Below, piece after piece: positions 26,089-49,041 of a stretch of 60,309 nt of DNA; the first letter of the stretch is position 1, and each line of letters begins with the position of its first letter. Position numbers and translations under genes: made by a program. The notes under the pieces are model-generated. The model ran no database searches. It was not told where the DNA came from and was given only the letters and a program-made list of their open reading frames with translations. The DNA lies in NCBI RefSeq assembly GCF_002571385.2, contig NW_019218045.1:216663-276971 (forward strand). The letters are read 5' to 3'. The DNA comes from Stylophora pistillata (lineage: Eukaryota).

Positions 26089-29000
26089 TCAGTTATTTGG
26101 TTTTGAAATTTCTTCTTTTATTGTCGCATACACATCCTGTGCCGGCCCCGGCCTTTGCACATTGTCTCTGATGCGATGAATGTCATTTCCCACGGGTCTG
26201 TACAATGCAACAACTATGACGTACTTGCCGCTGGGGCTTGGTGCTGCGCCCATTCCCAACTGGCTCGTATCTCCCCAAATCATTTGCGTGAAGTGCTTTA
26301 CTTTGTCGTTCAGCTGTGGATATGAAAAACTGAAAGCTTTTTTCTCACTGTACCATATGGTTGTCGCCTTTAGTGGCGCTCTTGGTAAGTCGTGCCATAT
26401 TTGAGCGATGTTCTCACCGAGAGGCTCCCCTTGGAAGGTGGAAGGATCGCTGGCCACAGATTCTGCTGTCTGCTGTGCTTGCTCTGCTAGGGTTACGTTC
26501 CACTGAAGTGGATTCACGTGATGCATTGCTCTGAGTTTGTTGTGTGCTGCAAGAGCCTCTTGAAATACCGCATCTGATCAAATGAGTAAAGGTTTTTACT
26601 TTGGAAATGTGCGACAAATACAAACGTTTGTCAAAGGAAGTGATTTACTTCTTAATTGTGTCAAGATCAAAATGCTCGAATATGAGTGGTTCTTAACAGC
26701 ACTTAGTTGTGGCTAAATTGGCTTTTTCAGGTCAAAACTGCTCGATTTCATCTGTCCGATTATAAACACTTGTAATCGGACAGGCCAAATCAGACGGTCG
26801 GGCCGTCATTAAAATTGTGCACTTAAAGCCACCAGCCAATAAAATTCAACTACCTAACCAATTCTAACCGATAAAAATGAGGGAAAACTTCCGAAGTGAG
26901 TACTGGAAATTTCGAAATATTTAGACGTGATAATCTTGAACTGTAGCTTAATATGTATCAATTAGAAGTCAATGTGCTGTTGCATTCAGTTTTTCCTCAC
27001 TGAGTTTTTCGCATTTTGTTATTGACACAATCAATTGCTAATCGGACTTCTCGTCCTACAATTCAAGAGTAATTTTACTCGTAATTCGAAATCACTTGCT
27101 CGATTATTTCCTGGATTGCACTCTTCTTACTCCTACAGTACAAGCCATACTAATACTTCAGACAGGGAAATAGTCTCTTCATGTATGTACCTGGTCCTTA
27201 CAGTGGAGGAGATCATAACCTTCATTAAACCATTCACCTTTTTACAATTACGATCTCCGATAACTTCCTGCCACTGCAATTTGTCACTTAGTACTTACTA
27301 TTCCTATTCCCCGTTCTGTTAGCGGCTGATGTTGCACCGGTTGATTTTGCACCGGTTGATGTTGCACCGGTTGCTATTGCACCGGCTGATGTTGCATCGG
27401 CTGATGTTGCACCGGTTGATGTTGCACCGGTTGCTGTTGTGGCGGCAGGGCTTTTACTGGTGACAGAAGCAATCTTTTCGGCAGTGGCGTCCGTTTTGCG
27501 GATAATTCCAATTCCAGTACTGCTCTTTGTCTTAATTCCGTTTTTAACGGTGGCCATGCTCTCATTTCGAGGGAGCGGAATGGTCCTGTTGTTAACATGT
27601 TTCTTCTGCTGAACGACGTTTTCCTCGGCAATGTAGATCTCGAGGGTTTTACGTGAAGCGGCTTAAGATTGGTATCATGCACATGCAAAGTAAATAAGTT
27701 TTTAAGGAACAACTAATTACTTTTTCAGCAAAATTTGGCAGTAACGCCGCAATTTGATCTGCCGTTGTCGATAAGAGTACAGACAATGCTGCTCTCGTCA
27801 ACGTTTCACGTAACGCACTGAAAGAGTCGTTTTATTTGATGTCGATGTATTGTGGTTGAAAAACGAATCGCCTGCGCCTCAAAGAGTCCATAACATTTTA
27901 ACGTGATGATGCATGTAGTTGTCGATAAGATTAGAGACCACGTTAAACCACTGTCGATTTGTTAAATCTAACACCGCTGTCAAACGAGAGCAACGAAAAT
28001 CTATGCATTTGATGAAAATTTTGTGCCCGTCAGGAAGATCATCTGTGCAGGAAAAGGAGTTTAGATTGAGCAATTTTTACAGACTCACCTTCTGCAATTG
28101 ACTCATCTTCAGACTCGGCCATTAAGCCTTTATTCTTCATCTTGTTTAATTCCTTACCTAACATTTGACCACCTAGAACATATAGAAAAGGTTTTGAAAA
28201 CTTTGAAAACCCAAACGGATTCGCAGCTGGCTTGCCCTGAGAAAAGTAAAGTCGCGAGGAATGAAATTTACTGTTGTTAATAAAATGAGAAAATTATGTC
28301 TAGTCAAACCTGTCTTAAGAAGGGACCCAGGACCCCTTAAATGTTCCCTCAATTTCTAATTTCTAATAGCCAGTGTCCAGGGCCTACTTATTCCAAAACT
28401 TTCCAGTCTTGAAATTTTCGTTATAAATTTCCAAGAAATTCCAGGTTTTCCAGTACTCGGATGCACTCTGCATCACTGCGGAGTTCAGAGTTCTTTCGGT
28501 CTAAGAGGTACCTCGTCATATTTTACCTTGTCGTCTTCTATCTTGAATGTCAAACTTTTCGTCGTCTTGAGATTTGTACGGGCGCACAGCATCCAGCACC
28601 TCTTCTTTGTTTCTCTCTCTGCCTGCAACTTCACTTAACACATCTGTTGCAGGAGACGAATCGCTGACTTCTTCCTCGTATTCTCGTGTTTCGTCTGTGC
28701 CATTTGTAAAGATGAGATATCATATATACAAGCAGTACTAATCACAGTTTCAGCGGATTTTCCCGGTCTAGTTATTGCCGGATTAACTAACGTTTGACAA
28801 AACTCCCGTTCATAGTTAGTAAACCCAATTATTGTGGGTTCTAGGGTTTCTTGATGTTATTGCGAGACACTATGCTGAGGGCTACGCCTAGCTTTGTTTC
28901 AAGAAAGGGTCTCCGTAAGAGCGGTCTACTCAGGTTTCATTGAAGTCTCCCCATTGGCTTGTTTGAAACCTGGTGTTCGAAAAAAGCGGCTCCATGGACT

Positions 29001-30218
29001 AGTTAGAAATTACACTTAGGGAAGAGGTGAATAGTCTCTGAAAGTTGTCACAGTCAAATTTAAGTCTTTGAAAATCGTCATAACAATCGTTCGCTCGAAT
29101 ACACCTAGACATCCGTTTAACTCGAGAAAATAAAGAGATCAATCAAGCGGATGGTGGTTTTTTAGTATATGTCTTGCGACACCTAGTCTGTGACTCGAAA
29201 TCAACCCTGTCTCAAAGCCTGCCGTCCATGCATGTTTTCGTGCTATCGATTGGGTTATTCTGTCCTCTTCATGGTACCATCGCAGAGGCAAGAAGCAGGT
29301 TTAAGCCCCAGTACCATAAAGGAAGTCACGGGCTGCTCAAGAAGAGTAAACCTGACACGAATCATGGACAAATCTGATACAGAACAACGATATATTAGAT
29401 GGGTAATGAAATAACTTTATGGTCACATGGTAACTACTGTAACTGTAGATTAACCTATACCTTCTACAAGTGGTCGCTGAACTTCGAGCCTTCTATCACT
29501 CCGTCCAGTCAACTGACTCGAAGATTGAGGCTTTTGGTCTGAAACAACTCCTTTATGCATTAGAGTATCCGAACTCTTCTTTGTTGCGTTTGCTATCAAA
29601 GCTTGGTTTGTCTTTGTAGTTTTGGAGCCAACCTCTGCGTAAAGGGACAACAGGAGATTACTCGCTTGGCCAGTGCTCAACAAATTGCCGATCCCAATCC
29701 GAAATTTCTTGTATGCAACTGGAATTTTTCCTTTTATTAAGCGCTCACTCACAACAGAGTTCGTACCAGCCAGGCATCGAAAGCAAATTCCTTGGCTTAC
29801 ATGTTCATTTGTTGATTTTTAAAATGGGATATGTCAGATTGCTCAAATCGATTGAAAAGCCGTGTCAGTTTCCTTTGGTAACGATTTGGACACGAAGAGG
29901 CAGATAATAAGAAGCGATAACCATAGCTTTAAGGAATTTCAACGGTAACACAGATATCTGAAGTTTGAGTTCCCTAAACAGGAACTCTCGCGTTGAGAGA
30001 GTTTAACATGTCTGTCAACATTTTCATGTGATCTTTTCACAAGAGGAAATGGATTCATTGTGGAAATTTGTCACGTGTACTTATGTCGATCTTTTTTATA
30101 CATCATTTCCTAACTCACTGCAAGGATTCTGGTAAAATCCCTCACCTTTTGCTTGCACCAGGAATGGTATAAGCAACAAGAGATTAAGTCCTTTTAAACA
30201 AAGTAGCCTCACTTCCAT
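26089..30218 (-). CDS. Secreted CAP (GAPR-1/GLIPR2-like) protein, paralog A, with Thr/Ala/Gly/Ser repeat linker
   Basis: Exons 30146-30218 (MEVRLLCLKGLNLLLLIPFLVQAK signal), 29461-~29790, 28527-28694, 27299-27661, 26089-26573 (ALAAHNKLRAMH...GENIA...WYSE...HFTQMIW...VVALYRPVGN). All introns phase 1. Confidence 0.85.
27322..27440 (-). repeat. 15-bp coding minisatellite encoding (ATSTG/ATSAG)n
   Basis: About 7 copies of gatgttgcaccggtt on the + strand, inside exon 27299-27661. Confidence 0.9.
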
Positions 30219-31553
30219 CTCTTTACCCTCCCAGCCGAGATACCTGAGAAGTTTAAACAGATTTGTTGTAGGAAAGCGTATTACAATTATTTTCTTGTCT
30301 ACCTTGGTGAAACGATCTATGTTCTGACTAAAACGTTGTAATCACCCTGTTTGGCCAAGGACGAATGCTAGTTATCCTTGTGGTGGTGGATACATTAACT
30401 CTCTGTAAGTAACTGTTTACTCTGAATGAATAAATCTTTCTGATTATGATTTACGTTTCATTTCGTGTACGTGCTTGTATATGAAAAATACGCTTAATAA
30501 TTACCCTAATCTTCAAACTCATGGTAGTTCCTTTCTGTCCCTGGTTAATTGTTCATTGCTGACCGATTAAAATTACATCATCTTACCTTCTCGTCGTCAC
30601 TAAAAAAACGTATGTTAAATGGCATTAGAGCAAGTTGTAAGCCAGTAGGGAATCGATTAAGTGACCTTTTGGTTTGGTGTTAATAGCAAGACGACCAACG
30701 ACAGGTTGTAATTCACAGATGAACGATCATTGAAGTTATTTTCTCAGAGAGAGAGTAGAAGTTACTCATCAAACAACTGTTTACTCGGTAAAATACCTGA
30801 ATCTTTAAGCAAGCTGATATTTCTTTTTCGAAAAATAAATCTAAATGTTTCCCTCAAACTGTCGACGTCGTTTTGCTAACAAAGCTCTGCAAATTCTTTT
30901 AGCCCAAACAACTCTGGGGCTTCACTTTCGAATGAAATTGTTTCAGGGATTGTCAAAGAAGGCCCATTACATTATTTTTGTACCACCCAGGTTTTAGATT
31001 AGGACATATCGCCCCGCCTTCCACATTGTAAAGCAGGTGACCAATGCATGTCTTTTCCATAGTTTTTCAGACAATATCATCTCGATAATTTTTAGTTTTC
31101 CATTTTCTTCATACACTATGCGCTCCATTTCACTTGACTTGAAAAGCATTTTAAGACATTTTCGCCCTCTGTTAAATTCGAAATCAGCGTTTTGAAAGTT
31201 ATTAGTCGACAAAGATCAAGTAAGGTATGTTGTGGTCATACGTATCCTTAAAATGCATAAATTTCTTTATTTTCAAAGCACGCAAGTCACTTCTAACACA
31301 CTCTATGTAACAAAGACATCTCACGGACTTCAAGTGTGTGGATAACTCATTCACGAATCTTACTAATTCTTGGTACGCAAAAAGTTTCCTCAAGATTTCC
31401 CGAAACAGAGTGCTTGTCGCGCTATCCAGCCAAGTTGGTAACATTTACCCACTTTCTTTCTTTGTCTTTTCCCCTTTTATATTCAAAAGTTTTCCTAACA
31501 AACGCCGGTCGAAAGCTGGAGCGTTCCACACGGCACACAGCTGAACTTTAACT

Positions 31554-34500
31554 TTATCGAATCGTCGAGTACAAATCGTGCCTAAGACCAGGAGGAAGAA
31601 TATTTTGCTGTAAGTGTCCCTCACTGGAAACAGGTGGATCATAAAGGGCAACTACAAAAGCATATTCTCCGCTGCCACTTCTTCTAATAGCAAGTCCCAT
31701 CTCTTTCGTTCCTTTCCATGTTATTTGCGCAAAATGTCGCGTTTTGCTATTTATCTTTGGATACGAAAAACTGTACGACCCTATTTCCTTGTACCATTTT
31801 TCTATCGCCTTCGTTATTGTACTCTCCCCAGTGTAGACTATTTGAGCGACACTCTCCCCTTGTTGCTCCTGGAGATCATCCAGAGTAAGGAAATCTTTGC
31901 CTGCGAGAGACTGAGCAATTTTTCGAGCCTTCCTTGCTAGGGAAGCTGACCAGGATAATGGAGGAGAAAAATGTTTGGCTCTGAGTCTATTATGTTCCTT
32001 CAAGGCTTCCCTCTCAACCTCATCTAGGAATCATAAAATTAATGATATTGGAAATAATAAGAATTGTAAATCTGAATTCGCTAGAAGAAGACTTGTAGCC
32101 GTACATAATTCTTATCACCGCGTACCTGCACAGATATCCTCATGACATCTTTTCGATTGAAACAAATCTTTTGGAGGACATGTATTCACGAGACACACAC
32201 GGGCTCTAACGATCACTCCTTTACCACAAGTTACTGAACACGAGGACCATTCATTCCATTCACCAAATGTAGCATCTAAAGGGAACGAAAGTACATTAAT
32301 TTCCTAATCCTGTGTAAAATGTTAGATGCAGGTTGAAAGGGTTAACTATAGTGGAATCACATTACATACACACTGTGCAGTAATACTGCGCTACACCCCA
32401 TATCACAGAATTTTGAGTTAAACGTTCACCTCATTACTTCCTACCTGCAATTTCTTATATCGAATACAGTGATATGTATTTCATTGTGTTTAATGTTAAT
32501 GTTTGGAACCTACCTTTGGTATCTGCATAGCCTCCATCATTTTCATCTTCAGGCGTTGGATGAAGTGGATAATAGTAAAGACTTTTCAGTGAAACATTAG
32601 TTGGCCTCGAAGATCTTGTAGGAAACGACAGAGAAGATGTCGTTCCCCGCAAAAAGGATATAATATGTTCGATATTTGTTAGGTCCGCTGTTGAGTAGCT
32701 CCAAGGCGGTGAAGGACGATAATTCTCCTCATTTCTTCGGAATCCAGTTGAAGTTGGCTTGTTATTTTTCCTATGTGAACGCATTCGCCTGTTATGATGC
32801 GGAAATGTTTTTCTATGGTCAAGTTTTGGTATCTTCAGAGTAGCTCTGATTCGTGCGTGAGGACTTTCCTCTACTTCTCTTAAGAGATCGTTTACTTTTT
32901 GAACGATTTGCAATTGCTCATCGCTAGATTTTGATTTAACTTTCTCTTTTTGGCTCTGAGATTCGTTATGAGATTGCTCAGTTTTTGACCCTTTTTTAAT
33001 TTCACCTATGACTTCAGGGCCTGAAAGTGGAACTAATTGTTCATCTGAATCTGAAAGTTGAAAACCTTTGATTTCGCTTTTGGCGGGTATCCAAAGAATC
33101 TTAGCACTCTTGCCAATTTTATCTACTTCAAGATTCAAGGTTTTCGAATGGTTATCGTTGCCGTTGCTGGAAATAGCTGTAGTATGATGTGAGAGTGTGT
33201 TGTTGGCAGGCATTTTGTTTTCCTTATAAGTAGCAAGTTGTATGTGTTGGCCTTCATTTATAATCTTCTCATCTTTACTTTCGCTCAAATGATTCCCCTC
33301 TCCACTAGCTATGCCGTGAAGTGTTTGTATCCTACTATCATTTCTATTGCTATGTGCCACTTCTTCCTCTGCTCCTTGCACCTTGCTATCGCCATTTACG
33401 TTATCAATGTTTATATCTTCAACTTGTTGATCACTGTTCATACTTTTAGCTTTAGCGTTTTCCCTACTTTTTTCATTCATTTCATCTTCCATTTCACTAT
33501 GTGGACTATCGTCTGTGTTGTCAGATAAAGAACCACTAGCGTCAGAGTCCTCCTCATTATCCGTGTCTTCCAGCTTTTCGGCGTCGATTTTATCACCTGC
33601 ATGTGAGCTTTCCTCACTGTTCCATTCATGATTGTTTCCAAGAGCATCTTCGTCCTGGAAACGATCAGAGTTACCGTCCTTTTCCGAGGAAGTATCGTCC
33701 TCATCGTCCGACTTATCGTCTGCTGTTTCGTTGTGTACGGTGCCAATGGTATTTTTAAACTCATCGCCGTAGGAATCAAAGTTATCCAGATAATCAGAAT
33801 TTTCATAGTAATCTCCTTTGTTATAGTTTTCTATTTCACGGAAAAGTTTTGTGTCTTGGTTTTTTATTCGTTCTTGGAGACTCTTTCTGGAAGATGCTTC
33901 GCTATTGCTGTCGAATTCGTCAAAAGTTCTACCAGTGGTACCGTCACTCACATCGTCAACATTTTCATTCCAAGATTTGTAACCGTGATCCGAGTTTTCA
34001 TGTTCAGAGTAATCGGACTGTGGGAAATCATTGTAATTGTCTGTTGATTTTGTTGCCTTACCACGATGTGCGCCAGTTTCAGCGTCGATCTTACTCAATA
34101 AGAAGTCTGTATCATCTCCCATTTGGTCATAATCCTGAAGAGACTGCGAGTTACTAGGAAGCTTAATTGTACCCTTGTGTCTTTCCTTCCCCTTTTTTCT
34201 TTGAAGAGCATTTGTTCGATGTTGATCTTCTATATCGGTTAAGTCCATATTTGAATCGAAATTGTCTGTATCTTCTAATGCATCGCTATCTTCAAAAGAT
34301 TTTACGTTGTAGTCGTTAGGATCCTTCATAAGCCAATCAACTGCTTCTTGGTTCCCTTCAAAGTCTGCTTTGGTTTCCAAGTTATACTCCGGCATGTCTC
34401 GTAAATTGTATCCCTCATCGTTATCCCCAGTATGGGAAACAGACATTTGGTCCACCCTTTTGTGGTGCTTCTTTCCTCTGTGCGACCCTTCGTCTGTTTC

Positions 34501-35513
34501 AATAGTAACGTCTAGTGGACGGAAGTCTTCAATTCCGTTTTCTTGAAGCATCACTAAAGATGAAGACAGATGTCAAAAGGCACCTTTGGTATGGAAATAC
34601 TATTGCATGGAGAAAGGCATATCGGCTTACAGTTCAAGTTGACCTTGATGCTGTAAGCACCAATGTACAGGGTTTTGCTTCACTGTACTTGATTTCTTTC
34701 TGTGTTTGATGAGCCCTACATGAACCCCCTTTCTAACATATCCGTAGGTCTAAGCCTATGATTACCATTACTTACTTCCCTCATCTTTACTCTCCTCAAG
34801 CAGTTTTGGTTGCACAAATGCGTGTAAGTTGTCAAGGTCATGCGGAGCTACGCGACTGTCGAGCATCACCAAATCTGCATGCAACACACACAAGATTTTT
34901 AACCATTTAAACATTTACGGCGTTCAAAATGTTTTTCTCTATTTATGCTATCAAATTAGAATCAACTGTGTATGATTAGCGTTGTAACTTTTTCTATTTG
35001 TCCTTACCTTGCAATGTTTTCCCTCTGTGAATTACTTCCACCTTGTTTCTACCGAATCTTATACCTGAAAAAGTAATTTCTTCGTGTTGAAAGCAGCAGT
35101 TGGTTTTAAGCAATTATTTGATGAGGTTGAGCATGATCTTATGAATGATCAAAACCGAGGTCTGAGTTATACGCTGAAGTCGAAGTTGAGGGTGATAACA
35201 CAGGCGCGAGGTTTATGATATCATGCGAAAATGGATTCAGTAATGTTTTATACTACATCTTTTTTAAACAATCTGCAAAGAAGATACTTCTTTCTGAGTT
35301 TCAGAGGACTACACGGACAAGGGGCTTGGAAACAAGAAAGAATTTGAACTCGACATGATAACTGCAATATCCGCTGCAGATATTGGGTCATCATGTCAAC
35401 TTCAAACAACCTCCTTAATCGACCGATCGGAGTTTTTATAGTAAGTCTAATGTATGATAATTAACAATTATTCCTATTGGCTATAATCATCTCATATCCA
35501 ACAAGCGCGAGTA

Positions 35514-35545
<32 letters not shown>

Positions 35546-35616: not shown

Positions 35617-35658
<42 letters not shown>

Positions 35659-35661
35659 GAA

Positions 35662-38585: not shown

Positions 38586-39200
38586 TAGAGATATAACATT
38601 TGACACCAATTTGATTTTTTTTAACTTGACGAAATCGAGTCACTGGACGACTTCGTTTACGTTTAGGAACGATTTACCATTGAAGATAGTTTTCTAGACA
38701 ATCTGGTAAACTGCAAGGAGAACAAACTTCAAGAGAACGAAAAATCTTGCGTTCTCGTCGCAAGACGGTTTCACTGTAAACAGAGTTTAAAGAAAACTGA
38801 TATACCGACGGATTATTAAATGAACAATTGGCTATAAAAATGCATTATAGAGTTTTCGTTGATATTTTGAAAGGTTTATGCTACTCAGCCACTGATTTTG
38901 CACTGTAGACATTGGGTACCATTTTTTTTGCGACTGATCTTCACATTTGCATTAAGTGTAAGTTCTAAATGGTATGTAAAAAAGATTAATACACGCGCTT
39001 CGATTACACTGAATATAATCTCGTTTTTAGTTCTTTTATGAAAACTGTCAAACATGTAAATGTTCTTTTCAATTCAACCTGAAGCTAACTAAAATAAACG
39101 TGTAAGCTGTAAAACACCGCTGACTGACATCTGTTCAAATATGAACGAAGACGTGCCCGGCGACGGCATAGATGGTTAGAGGCATCTGTACCCTGCTTTC

Positions 39201-42200
39201 CTAACTCTGCGGTTCAGGTATATGAATGTTAGTTTTCTCTTTATGTCTTAAGTTTCCAGGTGGATCATAAAGTGCTACCACAAAGGTGTATTTTCCATCT
39301 GAGCTTTTGGCTTCCCCAATCCCAAGCCTTTTCGAGTCTCTCCAGATAAGTTGAGTAAAGTGCTCGGTGGAATTGTCGATCATTGGATCATCAAAGTTAT
39401 AGCTCTTTACCTCGCTATACCAGTCAGCGGTAGCTTTCTCGGCAGCAATGTCGTAACTGTGCCACAGGCGAGCCACGTTGATACCGATATGCTCTTTTTT
39501 TAAGTCTGATAAATGGATTGCATTATGTGCCAACTGTTTTGCGATTTCTTGCGCCTTAGACGCCAAGCGCTTGGACCATTTCAGAGGAGGACTTCCGTGC
39601 CATGTTCTAAACTTGTTATGCAAACGAAGACCAGCTCTTCCCAGTTGATCTGCCAAAATCAAGAAATGGCATTTGAAATTAAAGATCATTCGTTTTTGTA
39701 CATCATGCATCATCATTCTTCCGGAACGGCATAAGATCGTTCACTATATCGACTACAGAAAATAAGATTTACCGCCTAGATGTAGAGTTTTTTTACGAGA
39801 TGAAAAGATATCAGTTCAAAATCTATCCGGTCTTATTTTGTATATATGTTTATCAGTATGATTTAATGCTTTTTATATTAACAAAGGCTGTATAATCTAA
39901 TTGCTTACGAGCAGTTTGAAGTTAGCAGATAACGTGATTTTTTTCCCTTGAAGTGATTGTCTTACCGGGACATGGCGGCATGAAACAGGCCTTGCTTTCT
40001 GTTCTGTACCCCTTGCACTGTCTTCCCTGACAGAACTGAGCTCTGGCTTGAATACCTTGACCACAGGTCACTGAACATGGCGACCAAGAATCTCTCACAC
40101 CTGTGCAGAGAGTATAGTATTAGGAAACCGTCGATAAAGAAGTTAGAGTCTGTTTATCGTAGATAGTGACCAAAACCTGTAATAGTTGACGCGTGCAACT
40201 GAGGTTCGAAACTTTGACACAATCGACTGAAAACGACTGAAATGGTCACAAGAAACATCATTTCAAATTTTGGGGCGAAATGTTTCATAGACCTAAGGAT
40301 TTGTTCCGCGTTACTTAAACCAAAAACAGTCAATATTTTTGACGTTTCAATGACGCCTACTGTTTTTACATTAGTTTCGAGAGAATTAAGGTTAATTTGG
40401 TTTTGATTTTGAGACACTTCATTGTAAAGCAGTCTATCGCTTTGACAGAAGTTACAGAAACATCGGCCAGCTTTAGTTGTGTCAAACCCTTACGAATTAT
40501 ATTATTTTTGCTGGTACATTTACGCAATGGTAGTTACTAGTTTTGATTCTGACCATTTTCTAACTTTCTGTTGTTGGATGTCCTCGCTAAGTCGTGGTCT
40601 GGTCTAAAGCTGAGTCTTGCCCTGTTTTCGGGAGGGTCCTCGAAAAACTTGGATGGCCTCAAAAAGCTTTTCAAGGACAAAAACTTGTGCTTTTCTTCGC
40701 CTTTCGGTAGTCTTGAGCTTAGAGGAAATATATCTGGTGGGGGTGATTGTCCTACCCCGGCAAATGATATCCTGTCTAGTTCGTTGTATTTGGTTGGAGA
40801 TATTTGTTGAAAACCATGCACTGCAGTCGGACTTCTCTGATTCTCGCCAGGGTTGCGACCTATGGTTGGGCTCACAGAAGGCAGATCAGCCTCGTGAAGA
40901 AGATCGTCATTTTGTTCCCAGTCATTCTTTTTATTTAATTTGGAGTTCGTTTTCCCAAGAATTTGCCAGCTGAGCATATTTGTTGTCAAGTTGTCGTCAA
41001 AGCCTTTAATCATATTTCCTTTCTTAGAGAAATCCCTTGCTGGAGCTGTTTGGCTTTCCCAGAGATAACGGTTTATTTCTTCAGCATCTGTCGCCATTTG
41101 TGGTTTATATTTGCTATATTCTTTCATTCCTAGGAATGCGCCACTATTAATAGTTTTGTTTGGATCTGATTCCGTTAATGTGACATTGCCAGGTATTTTA
41201 AGCACCAACGATCCATCATTACTAGTTCCAGCTTTGAAACTAACTGGTTTTCCAGCACCAGATATCTTAAGTGTCACATAGCCAGCATTTGATGAATCTG
41301 TTTCTTTTGATTGCAAAGCGTTCCTAGATGGCGTTTTGCCTACGTTGGGGTATTTAAGAATATCTACGGACTGATCTTTCATCATTCCTGATGGTACAAC
41401 AGAACCACCTTGGGAAACTTGTTCTTGAATATGTCGGTGTTCTTCATTTGGCGTGCTTGGCGGTTGTTGCTCATTGATCATTATGCTTTTCGAAGATATT
41501 TTTCCTGAAGTTAAAACGCTTCCTTGCGAAGGTAATGTAGGCAAATAATTAAGTGCATTAGGGTTAGCTGTCATTAATGTTTTCAGTTGATTGCGAAAAG
41601 GTGACAGAGTCGTTGCTTGTTTATGTGCAAGCAAAGAGCCGATTGCTGCGTCATTTTGTTCTATTTTTTCTCCTATCGCTTTTTTGAGCAAGTCTTGCTT
41701 AAGATCTTCACTATGGTAATCTGATTCATTTTGATGGTTCAGCAAGTCAAGAATCACTTTTTTGCCAATTACAGAAAAAAGATCTGAGTTATCAGAAAGT
41801 GAGTTGTGAGGCTGTTCTTGATTTGTATCAACGTCCTCAAAGAGCTCTTTATCTTGGGTATCAAGTTCTTGATCATAGTTCTTTGGCATTTCAAACGGAT
41901 TGTTTCCAAATTTAGAATTATAATCCGGCATTTTGTCGTACTCGGACTCCTTGTAACTATACTCAGGTAAAGGGTTATCTTTGTACATGTCACTGACTTT
42001 GCCAGCATCAGATGCCTGTGGCTGATCGTTCTCTATCTGGCTAATTTGGCGATAGAATTCATTATCCAACCCTCCATTACGAACGGTACCTGTAAAAAAA
42101 ATACGGATTATGTGAGGCTTCCAGACAGTTTTGTTTATTTTTATTTGAAAACTTCCTAACCAGCTCGATGCCTTATCCAGTTTCACAATTGTTGCAATAA

Positions 42201-44663
42201 AGGGGGGAGAAGGGGTTGGATACAACACAACTTGTCTTTCAATATTTTCAAAGAGAAGCTGCAAATGTAAGAGGAGAAGAGAAAACCACTGCTTTTGTTT
42301 TAAAGCCAGATTTCATTTTAGACCGCTGTACTGGTGGTACTCGGACCTGAACCGTGCATGTTAACGTGCATTTTTTCGGTCGTCACGTGCACGTGCAAAA
42401 GTGAAGTGGGTGCTTACTCATGTCTTCAGTTCTCCCCATTTCATCTCTTGTTACCTTCTCAACGAAGTTCCTACTACTCTTACTAAAATCTGTAGAAGAA
42501 GAAATTAGCGTTACCCATGTGGTTTTAACATTTTGAAGAGGTGAAGACCAGTACTAGCAGAGTGAAGTATGCACCGATATCCTGGATAGGCTCTGCAAGC
42601 CAATGCACAGGAAAACTCCTTTTTTAACAATCCAGGCTCTGAATGTCAATGGTGAACACCGAGAGTTTAATCTTTGTTTGTCAAAGCTACTTTCGTAAAT
42701 CCTAATTCTTTGGACCTCAAAAGCCAAAAAATGACACATCACTCTATATTTCTGATAAGTTACCGTTTGGTGACTTGTTATGAGAAGGATCCTGTATATA
42801 ACCTTCTTCAATCTTGGACATTGTTCCATGCGAAGAATCCTCATGATTTCCTGTGAGTTCTTTTGAGGATGAAAAGTAGTTTGTTAACAAAATACTAGCT
42901 ACCGATACAGATAAAAAGGGATTAAAAAACAGAGGGGTGAACGTAGCCTACGTGTAGCCGCACCCTCCCCCCGACAAAGGAGAAACGGAGCGAGGGAGGG
43001 TTGCGGGGGGGAGGGTGCGTCTACACGTAGGCTAGGGTGAAATTGATAACTACCCCTTCATGATTACTTTAATGTAAATCGTGCATAACCGAATTAGTGT
43101 TTGGGTGAACAAAAAGCTACAAAAGGAACTTTGGATGAAATATCTAACCGAACCCTCGTGTCGGCTGTCATTATTTAAATCGAATTTACCAACTACATTC
43201 GAACCTGTATCAAGCGGCACCGTATTAAGCAGTCACCCTTTATTTAGCGGTCAAAGTCTTGAATTTTTTTCCCCAATAATCGCTTTAGATTTCACCTTCA
43301 TTAAGCGGTCACCTCTATAAAGCGGTCGTGGTCATCATTTATTGAGTCCCAACGGCCTGTTTGTATTTAACGGTCACTTAAAGCGGAATCACTCAAACGA
43401 AACTGGGAATAATCCTTCTAGTAAAATGTAATACTTGTTTCTTATCCGAATTCAGTTAGTTGTATTTTTTTGCGAGTTTCCTAACCTTAAGTGGCCAACT
43501 ATGTCATGAAATGACGTGTCTTATCGTTTTTTATAATACCCTTGTTCTGTGGAACCTTTATTAAGCGGTCACAAAGCCTTCCCCGCTTAATACAGGTTTG
43601 ACTGTAGCAATTTCAGAGCTCAAACTACACTGAACTCACTGAGGCCCATTTAAAGCTACCAGAAGGGAGTAAAGTTTCGACATTTTGTATAGCCTGGATA
43701 ATTTTTCATTTTGTATAGCTTGGATAATTTTTCTACGTGCCGAAAAACGCTGTGGTTGTTTCGTTTAAGAAAATTAGCTGAGAGTAATTCCGAGAGTTTA
43801 TAATTTAGATTATTCTATTAAATTAAACTACACTGAAAGCCTTGTTTGAGATAATATTTACGGTGAATAGACAAGTGGAATATCACCTTTATCAAATTGA
43901 TTCACCAGGTGCTGGTCAAGCGATGACAGCTGTCCAGAATACAATATAGCGCTGTTTGTTAAACTTTGTTCCTCTGAGTTCATGAAAAAGGAAAAGAACG
44001 AAAAGTCAAAGTAGAGTCAAATATGATCCTACTACTTGTGGGTTGGTATGATATTAGATACTCATATCACCCTTTAGTAGAACAGACAACGATCTTCTTA
44101 TCATAGTGAAGGGTCCTTAAAACAGAGTAAATTGCCTTGTCAGTTTTGGGAGACGAAGTGTATCCGTTCTGTTATGCAATTGGTACAATCTCATCTAAAT
44201 TAACGTCGTCATAAACACACCTAGATAAACACAGTACTGTAAAGCAATTACCTTTAATTGCTGGAAGCTGGTGTAGAGCCGAACCTAGATCACTTTTTCT
44301 TGCACCCCCGGCATCTAACCCTAGCACATAACAAAAGATTGTCATATAGGTCTATACCAATGATTTTATTATTCAATAAACAGACTTCTTGCCAACCTGC
44401 AGCAGTCACTTTAAAAACATCCTCTGGTTTTAATCCGAGGAGAGCTGATCGTGCAGTTTTCTCGAATGGTAGTACAAGTAGTTTTCTCTCATGTTTTCCG
44501 CGGATTACCTTCCCGTGAGAACCTAAGGAAACAAGTTTGCAAACAGTCCTCAACCTGGATTTGAAAAGAATCGAAGACAGGAATATATGCATCAAAACGT
44601 ACCTTTCACTACAAGTAACAAGAACACCGGTATTAACAGCTGGGCAGTGGTAGCCTTGGTCAT
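39201..44663 (-). CDS. Secreted TSP1 + CAP protein, paralog C
   Basis: Exons 44603-44663 (MTKATTAQLLIPVFLLLVVKG signal), 44397-44522, 44252-44320, 43887-43973, 42418-42489, 40554-42089, 39966-40100 (TSP1), 39201-39649 (GLRLHNKFRTWH...WYSE...HFTQLIW...VVALYDPPGN). All phase 1. Confidence 0.85.
39966..40100 (-). other. Thrombospondin type-1 repeat exon of paralog C (missed by the ORF track)
   Basis: DSWSPCSVTCGQGIQARAQFCQGRQCKGYRTESKACFMPPCP: WSxCSVTCG signature, six Cys, symmetric phase 1-1 exon. Confidence 0.92.
42944..43034. mobile_element. Small hairpin MITE with TAG...CTA termini
   Basis: ~28-bp TIRs tagcctacgtgtagccgcaccctccccc / gggggagggtgcgtctacacgtaggcta. Imperfect 9-bp flanking repeat gggtgaacg/gggtgaaat. 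Confidence 0.7.
43196..43604. mobile_element. Tc1/mariner(pogo)-type MITE, second copy
   Basis: ta-CATTCGAACCTGTATCAAGCGG ... CCGCTTAATACAGGTTTGACTG-ta. Internal (t)taagcggtca repeats. Similar to 16517-16898. Confidence 0.7.
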
Positions 44664-46255
44664 CTTAGCTGTTAAACATTTCTGCTCATGCAGAGCATGG
44701 CTCTAATTTCCTTTCAAAACCATAAGAAATGCTATTAACAAACCAAAATATCAGCGAGAGTAGATATCTTATGAATATATAACAACGATTGAACTAAATA
44801 AATATTATTCAAGAATAAAAAGCATACGCCGAACAATATAAAAAGGACTCAAGTATCATGATCTCTCATCTGACGTTTAAGAGGTCAAACACGCGAGCGG
44901 AAGATATTTAGCCAGGTTGTCAACTTAGTTTATTGCAGACATGAGTGGGCAACTTCTACGTAATAAAAGATCCTGATTTTGGCTCACTCCAGTTGAATAA
45001 GGAGTGATCGGTGTCTGGGTAATTCCCAGTCGAGAAGTCACATAATTGTACATGTTTCCATTTTTTTAAATGTTTGATTTGGAATTTCTACTCTATAAAT
45101 GCTTCACGTTACAAAGTTGCGCTTATCTCCGGTGATACTTCGTGAATGAAGTTAAGATATCAGGTTTCGATGTTTGTATCTGATCGATGTGGCAATTGTT
45201 TTCTATGGCTGAAATACTTTATCGATCCATCCGTCGTTTGGTATTTAGCGCTAAAAAATTTCTTACATTTCGACTTGAGCCAACAAGGATTGTCAATTAT
45301 CCTCGTTCCGGTAGATATGCCCCGCTGTAAAGCTTTTGGAAATTCAGTGAGATTTATATCTTGTACCGAGGCACACAGCCTAAAAACAAAATGATAAAGA
45401 TGACTGTACCCCTTACTTACCGGTTACATACCAGGTTAATTTTAAGCGGCAGACATATCATTTTGGGCCATTGCAAAATATCTGATTTTCACCAAGAAGA
45501 CAGGTTAAATTAGTCATAAAGAAAGTCTTTAAGACAGGTGCTCTATTTATTACATAACTACGTGTCAAAAAAATTTACGGTCCGCAGAGTAACATTCGGT
45601 CTTTCGGTTGTGTTTAACGCTCTTGAAATGTCTTCGTCAAGCGCTCGAGACCTCGACAGGAGTAGAATCGGAGCTACCGGAAACAGTCGAAAAAATGCCG
45701 GATGGATTGAAAGACATTTTAAAAGACCGTGAAGAAAAGTAAAGCTGGAGTGACTGCATTAGAAAGCATCCGAATCTCGGCCATTTGAAACATTTCTCCA
45801 TTTGTAACACGGGCTTACCCTAATGTATGAGAGATGATCACATTCTATCAAACTCAGTCCCGGAATTATGTTTTAAGGCTTTCAACTTACTCGAGGCAGC
45901 GTGAAGGACATGATAAGACTTTGCATGTGCTGAATTTCAAAAGTAAAGAGACTGCTCCTTTTGTCGTTATTACTGAACTTAATCTCAACAATAGTTTGCC
46001 TAAAAGTGTGTAGAGTATACTCAAATTTACACTATTAAATCGTAAAAAGAAGTTGTATTTGGTGTGCCTAAGATAAAGCTCTGCATTTTTATTTAATGAA
46101 AATTTTATTTTACAACTCAGTTACAACTTAATTACCGTTGTGTTTGCATTTTTTGTATCCTCCATGAAAAAATTCGTTATCAAGTCTTTCACTCATGAAC
46201 AAAAATGAAAACAAATGAAAGTGTTACTTTTCAAGAGTTTAATTCACGAGGTATA

Positions 46256-49041
46256 TTAATCAAGGGTTGAATTTGATAGCATCTGTGCTCTCTTAAATAT
46301 TGTGGCGTAAACGTCCTCTGTCATAGTTCCTTTATTAAGTACATTATCTCGTAATCGTTTCCGATCATTCCCTGGTGGTTTATACAAAGCCACCACATAC
46401 AAATCATTAGTAGCAACATCCTTGGCGCATCCCATGCCAATTTCTTTCGTTCCTTTCCAGACCAGTTGAGTGAATGCGTCAGTTTGTGGAATTACTCGTG
46501 GATACGAGTAACTGTAATTACGGGATTCGCTATACCAAAGATCAGTTGCCACTGCTCCAGCATCGTTGAATGGAACACCAGTTATTTTTGCCACATTTTC
46601 TCCATAACCCATTGACTCTGCTAATTCTGAGCGTTCTACGGTTCCCCTCATGGCCATATCATATGCCATTTTTTCTGCTTGCGTAGCAAGTACGTCTGAC
46701 CAACGAAGATTAGAAGAGTGGTGTTCTTGACGGTAGTGATTATGAGCTTCAAGCCCTTTCTCAGCAAAAGTCTCGAGATCTAATCAACAAGTGAACAATG
46801 CGGTTAAACCACATACAACGACAGCATCAGACAACATTACAAAGGCACAGGATGATACCAACATAAATACAAAGGCAAAAATGGTTTAATGTTACCTTCC
46901 TTGATGTGCTCTGCTGTGGAGAATTCTTGCTTGTCTTTAGGAGTTCCAATCTCTGTGGCAGACTCAAATAAGACATTGTCTGATGGGCCAAGCGCTTTTG
47001 TCTGAGAACTTGATTTTGTAATTGGTTCAGATGGTGACATTTCCAGGTCTTTTAATGGGTCAAAGAGCGTCTTTTGAGGCTTCCGATATTCTTGCCCAGC
47101 CCCTCTGGTTGAAGCGGACAGTTCTACTGAGTTCGCTTTCCCATGGACAGGAATATCTTGTATAAACTGAGACTTTATCGTGGGCTCAACATAATGTAAA
47201 GAAACTGGATCTTTTTTAATGGCTCTTACACTTCCAGTTCTTGTATACGGTACGTTTTGAAGGTTTATATGTTGATTCTCTTCTCTTGGGGTTAAATCAG
47301 TAGGATAATTTATCACGTGCTTGCCCTGCAGACTTTTGATACTGGATTGTACTGCTTGCAATAACTTCTTGACAGCTTCAGCGAATGCAGCTGTAGTTTG
47401 TGCGGCAGACTGAGGCTTTCTGTTTGTGCGGTAATTATTATTTAGTTTCTCAGCTGTCCCTTTTAATGAAGGTAGGATCCTCACGCTGTAACCAACCTTG
47501 GTGGTTGGCCGCACTTTAGAGTCGCTCGCAAAACTTTTATTCTTTGTTTCTTTTGAGGGTTCTCCTATATCTTTATCAAGGGCTTCCTTAGACGAAGGCT
47601 GAGCATCGTTAAGTTTCCCTAAAGTATCCACGATACCTGCCGGCTTTTTCTCAGATTCAGTCTCATTGTCCACGTCTGTCTCCTTTTCTTGAAGAGGTTC
47701 ATCAGACAAATCTGCATTAGGCAGCAGTGATTCTCCTGATTTTGGAATTTTTAAAAGAACCCACGATTTTCGATTCCCTTGAACGTCTACCACCTTTTTT
47801 GAGGGCCACAAACTGTCAGGTACCCTCGACAACGATATTCCCTTTGTAAATTTGGGATCATCGTGCATTTTTCGTAAGTAATTTTTTAGCTCTTCCTTGG
47901 CCATAGACTTGATAAGATCGCTAACGGCTTTTGCCAGGGCAAAGGAAAATGACTTTTTGTGATGTTTCCTCGTTCTTATCATTGCATTTCCTTTATCGAG
48001 CTCTTTTGTCTGAGGTAAAAGTTTTATTCGTGAACTGGAATCAGTTGGATTATACCGGAGCAAAGGTTTGTATGTGGGTTTGGTTACAAGGTGTGCCTTG
48101 CGCCCAAACAATAGTCTTAATATTGAGATTCCCAACTCTGTGGGATTGATAAGCTCGGTATGTATAGTAGACTTCCGCTCTCCAGATGCACTGTTCCGAA
48201 GCGATGAAGTGTTCAAAAGACGTAATAGTTTGCTTCCAAAATCAAGAGGAAGCTCAGCTTTAGAGTTTTGAGGATCAGAACCAACAGATTCGTGCTCTTG
48301 ATTTACAGTGTTGTCATTGTCGAGAAGCACTTTAGCCAGAGACAAGGCATTGGAGTCTTTTACAAAATGATTCTTTTCGTTTAGTAACAGCCCTAATGCA
48401 GTGACGAGAGTGCGGGAAATGGGAATTGCGTGTTCAGGCTGCGATCTGCCTCCTGAAGCTGAAGGCAACATTATTGAAGTTCTTTTCTGGGTGCTTTTCG
48501 CTGTTGATGTAGCCCGTATTGCAAGTCTTGTTTTTGATTTTGGATGGATTTTCTTTGTGATTTTGCGCTTCTTGTTTGTTACTTTCTTCTTAAGGTTTCT
48601 AACGTCTCCAACGAAAGATGACAAAGCCAGTTCCTTTACTAAAATTTCATTCTTTGCTATTTCATCTTTTTTTAAAGGGGGAGAAAACCCTCTCTTTCGA
48701 GATGTATCTTTCTTCTCCATTTCAACGATTCTTTTCCAGTCTCGAAGGTGAGCTGATGTCCGCCTGACGAAATCAGGTGAGTTCTTCTCTCTCCAGAACG
48801 CATGGTGTTTGGAGTTGTGCTTATGACACAGGCCTACACAAGTAACACAATTAGACGTTATGCACTCAGATAGTTATCTGCTTGATATTGGCAATAATCA
48901 TTTGTACTGAAGTTTCTAAAGTTCAATTGGTTTCATTTCAATCTTTGAGTATTTTTAGTACTCTTGGATTATCTTACCTAGGTGGAAGGCGTTAGGAACG
49001 AAGGTTAATGAAAGGACCAGGACCAATAACTTTTCATTCAT
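46256..49041 (-). CDS. Secreted CAP protein, paralog D, with large Lys/Arg/Ser-rich region
   Basis: Exons 48978-49041 (MNEKLLVLVLSLTFVPNAFHLG signal), 46896-48833 (646 codons), 46256-46779 (GLEAHNHYRQEH...GENVA...WYSE...AFTQLVW...VVALYKPPGN). Phase 1 introns. Confidence 0.85.

What the first reader, a model, noticed from the sequence alone, without database searches (positions are those of the whole stretch)
26089..49041. Four-gene array of secreted GAPR-1-type CAP proteins with swappable giant low-complexity N-termini
Seen: four same-strand genes share one plan of signal-peptide exon, ~290-700 aa of mutually unalignable low-complexity sequence, and a single-exon, almost Cys-free CAP domain. 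Every intron is phase 1. Known: Cys-poor GAPR-1/GLIPR2-type CAP domains are typically small cytosolic myristoylated proteins, whereas secreted CRISP/Ag5/PR-1 members are disulfide-rich. Inference: this is a lineage-specific secreted family in which a constant CAP module is fused to interchangeable disordered modules, possibly co-deployed in one extracellular structure such as skeleton matrix, mucus, adhesive or cnida. This is the best candidate for an undescribed system here.
Basis: partly seen in the sequence, partly recalled or inferred. Interest (0 to 1): 0.8.

Follow-up and report, generated by a model that had tools for sequence, protein, structure and literature searches.

The report
Ancient array of secreted CAP proteins
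Four neighbouring coral genes each encode a secreted protein that joins a long, mostly floppy region to a small CAP domain; the family is real, old and unstudied, but its parts are inherited together rather than swapped.

Summary
The window is Stylophora pistillata. Four minus-strand genes (26089-49041) each end in one CAP exon that has 0-1 Cys and is closest to GAPR-1 or yeast Pry1. Each starts with a signal-peptide exon. All 19 introns in my models are phase 1. Gene 4 equals RefSeq LOC111335057 (uncharacterized, 841 aa).

Genes 2 and 3 carry a missed TSP1 exon before the CAP exon, plus 2 and 5 small upstream exons. Gene 1 has no giant exon.

The long regions cannot be aligned with each other and are predicted mostly disordered. 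They are not low-complexity and not swappable. Each has full-length orthologs across stony corals (31-86% identity). The gene 3 type is present in Nematostella, and gene 4-like CAPs occur in Hydrozoa and Scyphozoa.

Genes 2, 3 and 4 lie on contigs of equal length in six other assemblies. This is an ancient, linked paralog array, and age plus fast evolution of disordered sequence explains the unalignable regions.

Function is inferred as an extracellular matrix or secretion scaffold. The closest precedent is the abundant GAPR-1-type CAP + TSP1 skeletal matrix protein of Corallium rubrum.

Two first-reader notes overlap: s1-791849 covers this stretch, and s1-771626 reports another GAPR-1-like array elsewhere in this genome.

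The parts
30146..30218 (-). gene 1 exon 1: start codon and signal peptide, donor phase 1
   Evidence: hydrophobic Met-start exon with an AG|GTGAGG donor
29461..29634 (-). gene 1 exon 2 (1-1)
   Evidence: tblastn of relative's protein P0067; AG/GT sites and phases
28527..28694 (-). gene 1 exon 3 (1-1), acidic
   Evidence: The 3' end is longer than in the relative; the donor was chosen by phase and consensus only
28089..28172 (-). gene 1 exon 4 (1-1)
27299..27661 (-). candidate 363-nt 1-1 cassette exon in gene 1 (Ala/Thr-rich, holds the 15-nt tandem repeat at 27323-27439); unverified
   Evidence: open frame with AG and GTAAGT flanks; TRF. Absent from the relative's full-length proteins P0259 and P0264
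26089..26573 (-). gene 1 CAP exon with stop codon
   Evidence: Pfam CAP E 1e-15; 83% identical to P0067
35771..35834 (-). gene 2 exon 1: signal peptide, donor phase 1
35008..35064 (-). gene 2 exon 2 (1-1)
   Evidence: tblastn of Oculina ACROYT_G005412 (P0006), 63%; sites
34776..34874 (-). gene 2 exon 3 (1-1)
   Evidence: P0006 match 67%; sites
32514..34553 (-). gene 2 big exon: 680 aa, acidic (net -60), Cys-free, no Pfam family
   Evidence: Pfam TSP_1 E 2.7e-10
31554..32023 (-). gene 2 CAP exon with stop codon
   Evidence: Pfam CAP E 4.7e-20; PDB 1smb E 1.5e-22
44603..44663 (-). gene 3 exon 1: signal peptide; the 5' UTR reaches at least 44711 in RNA contigs
   Evidence: splice 44603 to 44522 seen in 4 of 4 runs laid
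44397..44522 (-). gene 3 exon 2 (1-1)
   Evidence: RNA joint at its 5' side. Its 3' side is supported only by a loose end of a contig. Ortholog match; phases
44252..44320 (-). gene 3 exon 3 (1-1)
   Evidence: RNA joint 44252 to 43973
43887..43973 (-). gene 3 exon 4 (1-1)
   Evidence: RNA joints on both sides
42764..42859 (-). gene 3 exon 5 (1-1)
   Evidence: RNA joints
42418..42489 (-). gene 3 exon 6 (1-1), skipped in one RNA contig form
   Evidence: joints 42489|42764, 42087|42417 and the skipping joint 42087|42763 in run X2
40554..42089 (-). gene 3 big exon: 512 codons, Cys-free. Its real start is about 170 nt downstream of the open frame's start
   Evidence: RNA joint; ortholog P0233 55%; donor chosen by phase
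   Evidence: Pfam TSP_1 E 5.9e-11; 86% to Oculina; few raw reads
39201..39649 (-). gene 3 CAP exon with stop codon
   Evidence: Pfam CAP E 1.4e-21; PDB 1smb E 2.2e-28; raw reads
48978..49041 (-). gene 4 exon 1: signal peptide
   Evidence: identical to the N-terminus of RefSeq LOC111335057 (P0190)
46896..48833 (-). gene 4 big exon: 645 aa, basic (net +42), 1 Cys
   Evidence: 100% identical to P0190
46256..46779 (-). gene 4 CAP exon with stop codon
   Evidence: Pfam CAP; P0190; PDB 5ete and 1smb

Best explanation
SHOWN. The locus is a conserved tandem array of four ancient paralogs in Stylophora pistillata. Each gene encodes a secreted modular protein built as follows:
- a signal peptide;
- a long, Cys-free, mostly disordered region that carries conserved short motifs and helices specific to that gene type;
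- in genes 2 and 3, one thrombospondin type-1 (TSP1) repeat;
- a C-terminal, disulfide-free CAP domain of the GAPR-1/Pry1 type whose His/Glu tetrad is incomplete.
Every coding junction is phase 1, so all internal exons are symmetric cassettes. At least one is skipped in RNA.

INFERRED (history). The four genes arose by old duplications, before the stony-coral radiation. Genes 1-3 form one CAP clade, and gene 4 belongs to a sister clade that also holds dispersed short CAP genes. Each disordered region has since evolved together with its own CAP domain. The regions are unalignable because of age and the fast evolution of disordered sequence, not because modules were exchanged.

INFERRED (function, not shown). 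The proteins act outside the cell as matrix or surface-secretion scaffolds. TSP1 would anchor to matrix or glycans. The CAP domain would act as a non-catalytic binding or self-association module. The charged disordered regions (net -60, -10, +42) would act as spacers or interaction surfaces.
For: Gene structure.
- CAP in 4 of 4 terminal exons. TSP1 in genes 2 and 3, each with 6 Cys.
- Signal exons with phase-1 donors. 19 of 19 introns are phase 1.
- Gene 4 equals RefSeq LOC111335057.

RNA for gene 3.
- Joints were seen for 5 of its 8 introns, plus one exon-6-skipping joint.
- The few raw reads over the big, TSP1 and CAP exons all have the first mate on the + strand, as expected for a minus-strand RNA.
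- The intron bins 39700-39899 and 40100-40499 have no depth in any of the 4 runs.

Orthology of the long regions.
- Gene 2: 27 of 39 hits cover at least 98% of the query, at 31-71% identity.
- Gene 4: 31 of 34 hits are 41-100% identical.
- Gene 3: hits reach 84%.
- Named full-length models have the same architecture: Oculina ACROYT_G005412 (TSP_1 + CAP) and ACROYT_G005413 (TSP_1 + CAP), Oculina LOC144638816 (CAP), and models from Montipora foliosa, Acropora muricata and A. millepora.
- Nematostella LOC5506678 (850 aa) shows signal peptide, long region, TSP1 and CAP in its sequence.

Linkage. Genes 2, 3 and 4 sit on contigs of identical length in 6 other assemblies, one of only 79,655 nt. Two of the three do so in 5 more.

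CAP tree. Genes 1+2+3 with their orthologs form one clade (98/96). Gene 4 lies in a sister clade (96/83).

Disorder. 536 of 645 residues (gene 4) and 391 of 516 residues (gene 3) have pLDDT below 50.

Tetrad. The first His is lost in all four genes. In gene 3 Glu is replaced by Ile, and in gene 4 the last His by Ala. These changes are conserved within each orthogroup.

Functional precedent.
- Three GAPR-1-like genes are up-regulated in the Exaiptasia pedal disc (PMC6626399).
Against: - No direct evidence of secretion, location or cell type.
- No gene of the array appears in the main-text tables of the S. pistillata skeletal proteome. I could search only by LOC-number prefix. Genes 2 and 3 seem to be missing from the reference proteins: no 100% hit turned up.
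- In S. pistillata RNA I saw no joint rows for big exon to TSP1 to CAP of gene 3. Depth was 3 or less.
- Same-contig linkage is inferred from equal contig lengths, not from coordinates.
- The array is not an exclusive clade (AU p = 0.02). Gene 4 may therefore have joined the neighbourhood separately.
- Low pLDDT from 31-35-row alignments is only a proxy for disorder.
Confidence: 0.7

Rival explanations
1. One reading: a constant CAP exon has been recombined by exon shuffling with unrelated, interchangeable disordered modules in a lineage-specific family.
For: The uniform 1-1 exon design permits shuffling. The N-terminal regions show no detectable homology, even profile against profile. The CAP tree puts gene 4 in a different clade from genes 1-3, so at least one N-terminal region may have been acquired independently, long ago.
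Against: Every N-terminal region tested stays with its own CAP orthogroup across Scleractinia, and for gene 3 as far as Nematostella. No mixed combination appeared among the named models. Orthologous long regions diverge about two to three times faster than CAP, which is enough to erase paralog similarity. The family is found across cnidarians.
Confidence: 0.1
2. The proteins are venom or nematocyst components, as many cnidarian CAP proteins are annotated ('toxin candidates').
For: A gene 1-like CAP protein of Ceriantheomorphe brasiliensis is deposited as a 'toxin candidate'. CAP proteins NEP-16, -17 and -20 are released from Nematostella nematocysts (PMC3627010). A GAPR-1-like protein co-purified in hemolytic fractions of S. 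pistillata (PMC5762905).
Against: The Nematostella relatives found here (XP_001627387 and XP_001639601) are not the NEP accessions (XP_001641525, XP_001625851, XP_001626820). According to that paper those CAPs are short, single-domain proteins. The proteins here are 327-959 aa with TSP1 and long conserved disordered regions, and their CAP domains are 79-88% identical between Stylophora and Oculina. That is unlike fast-evolving toxins. The 'toxin candidate' label is an automatic transcriptome call.
Confidence: 0.12
3. The gene models are artefacts: the big open frames are separate genes or pseudogenes not joined to the CAP exons.
For: No S. pistillata RNA joint was seen for big exon to TSP1 to CAP of gene 3. 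No 100% S. pistillata protein was found for genes 2 and 3.
Against: The gene 4 model is RefSeq's own. Annotated full-length models from Oculina, Montipora, Acropora and Nematostella join the same parts in the same order. All splice sites are canonical and phase-compatible, with zero in-frame stops. RNA depth lies on exons and not on introns 7 and 8.
Confidence: 0.04
4. They are intracellular GAPR-1 (GLIPR2) orthologs that work at Golgi membranes.
For: GAPR-1 is the closest solved structure for genes 2 and 3. The CAP domains lack disulfides.
Against: Hydrophobic signal-type N-termini are conserved in orthologs. A disulfide-bonded TSP1 repeat sits in genes 2 and 3. The CAP domain is at the C-terminus behind 150-800 residues. 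The tetrad is incomplete. S. pistillata has other, more canonical single-exon GAPR-1-like genes that keep the tetrad, on contigs C127 and C2.
Confidence: 0.02

Closest known systems
Human GAPR-1 / GLIPR2 (PDB 1smb, 4aiw, 5vhg)
   Same: Minimal CAP domain of about 150 residues without the disulfides of CRISP/PR-1. It is the best solved match for genes 2 and 3 (E 1.5e-22 and 2.2e-28).
   Different: From recall, GAPR-1 is a small cytosolic, myristoylated, Golgi-associated protein with no signal peptide and a complete His/Glu tetrad. Here the domain is C-terminal in secreted proteins of 327-959 aa, and every paralog lacks at least one tetrad residue.
Yeast Pry1 (PDB 5ete, 5jys)
   Same: The 298-residue Pry1 chain has its CAP domain at residues 163-296. 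It is the best solved match for genes 1 and 4. NCBI names a Nematostella member of the gene 4 clade 'protein PRY1'.
   Different: Pry1's secretion and its sterol and fatty-acid binding are recalled, not tested here. Pry1 has no TSP1 repeat, and its N-terminal region is much shorter.
Corallium rubrum skeletal organic matrix protein CR_3-4 (PMC7853314)
   Same: Described as an extracellular protein that combines a GAPR-1-type CAP domain with TSP1 repeats in an anthozoan. [quoted passage not shown]
   Different: The domain order is CAP followed by two TSP1 repeats. Here one TSP1 precedes the CAP domain, behind a 500-800 aa disordered region.
Nematostella vectensis LOC5506678 (A7SLZ5, 850 aa), Hydractinia LOC130645285, Oculina ACROYT_G005412/5413 and LOC144638816
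   Same: True relatives with the same architecture. All are annotated only as uncharacterized, hypothetical or SCP-domain proteins.
   Different: None has a described function. No paper in the searched library holds these identifiers.
Cnidarian nematocyst CAP proteins (Nematostella NEP-16/17/20; Hydra NOWA)
   Same: CAP-domain proteins secreted by cnidarians (PMC3627010).
   Different: The NEPs are short, single-domain proteins with different accessions. In that paper's words NOWA's CAP domain is highly derived, and NOWA combines other domains.
CRISP / antigen 5 / PR-1 secreted CAP proteins
   Same: Same Pfam family (PF00188); secreted.
   Different: Those proteins are disulfide-rich (recalled). 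The array CAP domains have 0-1 Cys, and there is no CRISP-type C-terminal domain.

Membership tests
CAP superfamily (Pfam PF00188) | Profile match above the curated gathering score | tested here: met
   4 of 4 terminal exons score 29.5-78 bits against a cut-off of 21.1
CAP superfamily (Pfam PF00188) | Alpha-beta-alpha sandwich fold | not tested
The fold is inferred only from sequence matches to 1smb and 5ete
GAPR-1 / GLIPR2 subfamily | Closest to GAPR-1 among solved CAP domains; no disulfide cysteines | tested here: met
   1smb is the best match for genes 2 and 3, and second within about 5 bits for genes 1 and 4. Cys counts are 0, 0, 0, 1
GAPR-1 / GLIPR2 subfamily | Small cytosolic protein without a signal peptide (N-myristoylated, Golgi-associated; recalled) | tested here: not met
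   Signal-type first exons. The CAP domain is C-terminal in models of 327-959 aa. TSP1 is present in genes 2 and 3
GAPR-1 / GLIPR2 subfamily | Complete His-Glu-Glu-His tetrad (residue roles recalled) | tested here: not met
   At the canonical first-His column genes 1-4 have Q, L, S and R. Gene 3 has Ile at the first Glu position, and gene 4 has Ala at the last His position. The changes are conserved within orthogroups. Other S. pistillata paralogs keep the tetrad
Thrombospondin type-1 repeat (PF00090) | Profile match above cut-off with six cysteines and a CSxTCG core | tested here: met
   Gene 2 scores 40.7 bits and gene 3 42.8 bits against a cut-off of 21.6. The sequences are seen. No TSP1 signature occurs in genes 1 and 4
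Coral skeletal organic matrix proteins | Detected by mass spectrometry in cleaned skeleton | tested here: inconclusive
   No LOC1113349/50/51-prefixed entry and no CAP, SCP or pathogenesis term occurs in the main text and tables of Peled et al. 2020. Supplements were closed. Genes 2 and 3 may be missing from the reference proteome that study used
Cnidarian nematocyst venom CAP proteins | Identified in discharged-capsule proteome or cnidocyte-specific expression | tested here: not met
   The accessions of the Nematostella relatives found here differ from those of NEP-16, -17 and -20. S. pistillata itself was not testable
Pry1-like sterol-exporting CAP proteins | Sterol or lipid binding through the caveolin-binding-motif loop | not testable with these tools
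   The loop is present, but in all four genes its last aromatic position is aliphatic (read; the motif is recalled). Binding needs an assay

The most novel reading that the evidence does not exclude
The linked genes form one co-secreted extracellular assembly system that is as old as Cnidaria. Strongly acidic (gene 2, net -60) and strongly basic (gene 4, net +42) disordered chains would be brought together by self-associating, non-catalytic GAPR-1-type CAP domains and by TSP1 anchoring. Together they would build a hydrated matrix or coacervate at the aboral or calicoblastic surface. This would be the hexacoral counterpart of the abundant CAP + TSP1 protein of the red-coral skeleton, and genes 2 and 3 would have escaped skeletal proteomics because they are missing from the reference proteome.
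Probability: 0.12. Interest if true: 0.7.

Novelty: new variant of a known kind. Interest (0 to 1): 0.4.

Why it matters
CAP domains are widespread, but their biochemical role is poorly understood. This family places a tetrad-deficient, disulfide-free CAP domain at the end of very long conserved disordered chains. Twice it is combined with TSP1. The family has been kept as a linked gene set through coral evolution.

It gives named, testable candidates for coral extracellular matrix, mucus, adhesion or skeletal organic matrix. It also points to a possible gap: genes 2 and 3 appear to be absent from the S. pistillata reference proteins that proteomic studies search against.

Finally, it is a clean example of two things. 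One is an all-phase-1 mosaic gene design. The other is how fast-evolving disordered regions can look 'swapped' when they are simply old.

Tried and rejected
- Pfam on the three big exons: 0 of 3 matched any family at E 0.01 or below.
- Five other open stretches in and around genes 1 and 3: no family at E 0.1 or below.
- ESM Atlas look-alikes for the gene 2 and gene 4 long regions: one 0.76 hit to a bacterial cluster and no usable hit. I treated these as nothing.
- Shared short motifs between paralog N-termini ('PEY', 'LKIP', 'SLKS'): considered as relics of common descent. They are not significant in hhalign or BLASTP, and the gene 2 'IP' motif is not kept in Oculina. I make no claim from them.
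- Logan ORF P0074: checked as possible spliced evidence for gene 2. It reads through intron sequence, so it gives no evidence.
- Poly(A)-signal scan between the genes: not decisive for the gene 4 to gene 3 read-through question.
- Paper searches for LOC and accession identifiers of gene 4 and of its Nematostella, Hydractinia, Acropora, Oculina and Actinia relatives: 0 relevant papers.
- Term look-ups in four papers found nothing on CAP, SCP or GAPR in the main text: the Nematostella matrisome paper, the Pocillopora laser-capture paper, the S. pistillata cell atlas and the Hydractinia atlas.
- One broad paper search was badly designed and uninformative. PMC3204972 was uninformative.
- Supplementary tables were closed and may hold the expression or peptide evidence I lack. 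These are the cell-atlas marker lists, the skeletome lists, and Additional files 3 and 11 of PMC7853314.
- The joined step was left out.

Full report
WHAT IS THERE. The window is from Stylophora pistillata. The big exon at 46840-48834 is 100% identical to NCBI 'uncharacterized protein LOC111335057' (841 aa). That protein's sequence equals my three-exon model of gene 4. On the minus strand between 26089 and 49041 lie four genes, numbered 1 to 4 by rising coordinate. Transcription order is 4, 3, 2, 1.

Each gene ends in a single exon that holds a whole CAP domain. 4 of 4 hit Pfam PF00188 above its cut-off. The domains are 34-41% identical to each other and have 0, 0, 0 and 1 cysteines. Among solved structures, GAPR-1 (1smb) is the best match for genes 2 and 3. 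Yeast Pry1 (5ete) is narrowly the best for genes 1 and 4, with 1smb next. The observation of a Cys-poor, GAPR-1-like, single-exon CAP module is therefore correct.

GENE MODELS. A scan for Met-started hydrophobic exons found one candidate upstream of gene 1, two upstream of gene 2, one upstream of gene 3 and four upstream of gene 4. In each case one candidate ends in a consensus donor in phase 1. I built exon tables from four sources:
- ortholog proteins mapped by tblastn;
- the sequence itself;
- RNA, for gene 3 only;
- the RefSeq protein, for gene 4.

The resulting models are gene 1 with 5 exons (327 aa), gene 2 with 6 exons (959 aa), gene 3 with 9 exons (876 aa) and gene 4 with 3 exons (841 aa). 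All have canonical AG/GT sites and no in-frame stop, and 19 of 19 introns are in phase 1.

- Genes 2 and 3 have a thrombospondin type-1 exon between the big exon and the CAP exon (Pfam TSP_1, E 2.7e-10 and 5.9e-11). Each has six Cys. They are the only two TSP1 signatures in the array.
- Gene 2 has two small exons after the signal exon, and gene 3 has five.
- The gene 3 big exon really begins at 42089, not at the start of the open frame.
- Gene 1 has no giant exon at all.
That frame has phase-1-compatible AG and GTAAGT flanks and holds a 15-nt tandem repeat. It is absent from the full-length proteins of a close relative (P0259 and P0264).

RNA. I searched for runs with the gene 3 stretch, 39100-45099. 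24 runs were listed, and 11 on record as RNA hold part of it. Four runs were laid.
- The signal exon is spliced to exon 2 in all four runs.
- Run X2's contigs give the joints of introns 3, 4, 5 and 6, plus a joint that skips exon 6. That exon is therefore a cassette.
- Intron 2 is supported only by a loose contig end.
- Depth was low (3 or less). For the big, TSP1 and CAP exons I have only a few raw reads, lying on the exons, with the first mate on the + strand. There are none in the bins 39700-39899 and 40100-40499, and no joint rows.
- The junctions big exon to TSP1 to CAP therefore rest on annotated orthologs, not on S. pistillata RNA.

THE LONG REGIONS. They cannot be aligned with each other. 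BLASTP best E values are 0.43, 0.29 and 0.53. Profile-profile comparison of ortholog alignments gives E 0.2 or higher at under 1% probability. They match no Pfam family and nothing usable in the Atlas.

AlphaFold2 with 31- and 35-row alignments gives mean pLDDT 39.9 for gene 4 (536 of 645 residues below 50) and 43.6 for gene 3 (391 of 516 below 50). Only isolated helices and one small hairpin reach 66-77.

The regions are nevertheless not low-complexity. Residue entropy is about 4.0 bits, compared with 4.07-4.14 for the CAP domains. There is no tandem repeat in any big exon. They contain 0-1 Cys, and their net charges are -60 (gene 2), -10 (gene 3) and +42 (gene 4).

They are also conserved.
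- Gene 2 found 39 proteins, 27 of them covering at least 98% of the query at 31-71% identity.
- Gene 4 found 34 proteins, 31 of them 41-100% identical.
- Gene 3 found 36 proteins, at up to 84% identity.
- The gene 4 alignment has long invariant blocks.
- The gene 3 alignment keeps 25 invariant columns even with Nematostella included.

RELATIVES AND AGE. Named full-length models repeat each architecture:
- Oculina patagonica ACROYT_G005412 (gene 2 type; TSP_1 + CAP);
- Oculina patagonica ACROYT_G005413 (gene 3 type; TSP_1 + CAP);
- Oculina patagonica LOC144638816 (gene 4 type);
- Montipora foliosa and Acropora muricata models (gene 3 type with TSP_1; Montipora also gene 4 type);
- Acropora millepora LOC114965693 isoform X5, a gene 3 type without the TSP1 segment. 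This fits a TSP1 exon used as a cassette.

Deeper relatives are:
- Nematostella LOC5506678 (A7SLZ5), 850 aa, with signal peptide, long region, TSP1 and CAP;
- Hydractinia LOC130645285 and a Sanderia protein with gene 4-like CAP domains behind long N-termini;
- Actinia LOC116300337 and a Ceriantheomorphe 'toxin candidate' with gene 1-like CAP domains;
- a Paramuricea protein and short 'GAPR-1-like' or 'PRY1' proteins in the gene 4 clade.

A CAP-domain tree of 42 rows that I chose shows genes 1, 2 and 3 with their orthologs as one clade (98/96). Gene 4 falls in a sister clade (96/83). That clade also holds a dispersed S. pistillata gene on contig C250, Nematostella 'PRY1' and the medusozoan forms. 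An AU test rejects an exclusive clade of the four orthogroups (p = 0.02). The group was named after I had seen the tree.

The S. pistillata genome has 112 CAP-exon matches among 131 candidates. The four array exons are by far the best (E 3e-78 to 4e-74). The next best is 3e-46. Another first-reader note (s1-771626) reports a nine-locus GAPR-1-like array elsewhere in this genome.

Linkage is indirect. Hits for genes 2, 3 and 4 come from contigs of identical length in six other assemblies (46,518,285; 3,234,440; 79,655; 572,472; 1,525,972; 1,121,608 nt). Two of the three genes do so in five more.

WHY 'SWAPPABLE' IS NOT SUPPORTED. Between Stylophora and Oculina the long regions are 38% (gene 2), 55% (gene 3) and 58% (gene 4) identical. 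The matching figures for the domains are 66% (TSP1 + CAP of gene 2), 78% (CAP of gene 3) and 88% (CAP of gene 4). The Nematostella gene 3-type long region is 21% identical in the alignment, while its CAP domain is 48% identical. Paralog CAP domains are only 34-41% identical, so the faster regions should be far beyond recognition. No exchange of modules is needed, and no ortholog showed a mixed combination. The all-phase-1 design does allow shuffling, and it may explain how TSP1 and CAP first came together. I cannot test that.

THE CAP DOMAIN. I aligned the domains with other S. pistillata paralogs and a fish multi-CAP protein that keep the His-Glu-Glu-His pattern (residue roles recalled from the CAP literature). 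At the first His position genes 1-4 have Q, L, S and R. Gene 3 of stony corals has Ile for the first Glu, while Nematostella keeps Glu. Gene 4 has Ala for the last His. Each change is conserved within its orthogroup. This points to a binding or assembly module, not a metal-dependent site.

FUNCTION (INFERRED). The signal peptides, a disulfide-bonded TSP1 repeat and the mosaic 1-1 exon design all point outside the cell.

The nearest documented precedent is the red coral Corallium rubrum. Its protein CR_3-4 is described as a GAPR-1-type CAP domain followed by two TSP1 repeats. [quoted passage not shown] The authors note GAPR-1's amyloid-like assembly and TSP1's many matrix ligands, and they leave the function open (PMC7853314; passages, and section 13 read in full).

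Two further leads exist. Three 'GAPR-1' genes are up-regulated in the Exaiptasia pedal disc (PMC6626399, table passages). A GAPR-1-like protein appears in hemolytic fractions of S. pistillata (PMC5762905, table passages). Neither could be mapped to these genes.

Against a skeletal role, the main-text tables of the S. pistillata skeletal proteome hold no nearby LOC number and no CAP term (PMC7115838). However, genes 2 and 3 have no 100% match among the proteins searched, so they may simply be missing from the reference used in that study.

Against a venom role, the Nematostella nematocyst CAP proteins NEP-16, -17 and -20 have other accessions and are short (PMC3627010, passages).

VERDICT. The locus is a conserved array of ancient paralogs that encode secreted proteins built as disordered region, optional TSP1 and CAP. 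It is not a set of swappable modules, and it is not restricted to a narrow lineage. It is a new variant of a known kind, namely secreted GAPR-1/Pry1-type CAP proteins. No function is described for it in any paper I could search. All searches were exon by exon.

Noticed in passing
window 44601-45099 and upstream: In RNA run X1 a 2181-letter contig (depth 19) starts exactly at the donor of gene 3 exon 1 and runs upstream past 45099. If it is colinear with the genome, it would end at about 46781, the acceptor of the gene 4 CAP exon. An unspliced contig also crosses gene 3 intron 1 (44495-44630). The gene 4 3' UTR may run into gene 3's first exon, or transcription may read through from gene 4 into gene 3. 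DNA in the library is not excluded.
   Followed up: partly
window 27299-27661: An Ala/Thr-rich 121-codon open frame lies inside the last intron of gene 1. It has AG and GTAAGT flanks in phase 1 and a 15-nt tandem repeat (7.8 copies, 27323-27439). It may be a young, species-specific cassette exon or an open minisatellite. It is absent from a relative's transcripts.
   Followed up: partly
window 42418-42489: Gene 3 exon 6 (72 nt, 1-1) is both included and skipped in contigs of run X2. In Acropora millepora isoform X5 the TSP1 segment is missing. Cassette use therefore seems common in this family.
   Followed up: partly
G000 contigs C163, C127, C2, C21, C105, C250: The genome holds 112 CAP-exon matches, many in clusters. 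C163 has about 30 two-exon hits between 307 and 436 kb. C127 and C2 have single-exon GAPR-1-like genes that keep the His/Glu tetrad. This is probably the nine-locus array of note s1-771626.
   Followed up: partly
window 57138-57899: A minus-strand open frame with a reverse-transcriptase domain (Pfam RVT_1, E 5e-22): a retroelement fragment next to the array.
   Followed up: no
window 43500-44299: A few raw reads with the first mate on the minus strand lie inside gene 3 introns. They suggest weak antisense or repeat-derived transcription. X1 contigs at 42979-43304 and 43503-43668 also lie in intron 4.
   Followed up: no
window 6569-7435: An 867-letter run of N (assembly gap or mask), plus single N at 20563 and 51347. 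I left them alone.
   Followed up: no
P0040-P0066: The strongest profile hits to the array's CAP domain are proteins with 2-10 tandem GAPR-1-like CAP repeats. One example is a 1226-aa protein of the fish Brienomyrus brachyistius with 7 repeats. This is a different way of making large proteins from this domain.
   Followed up: no
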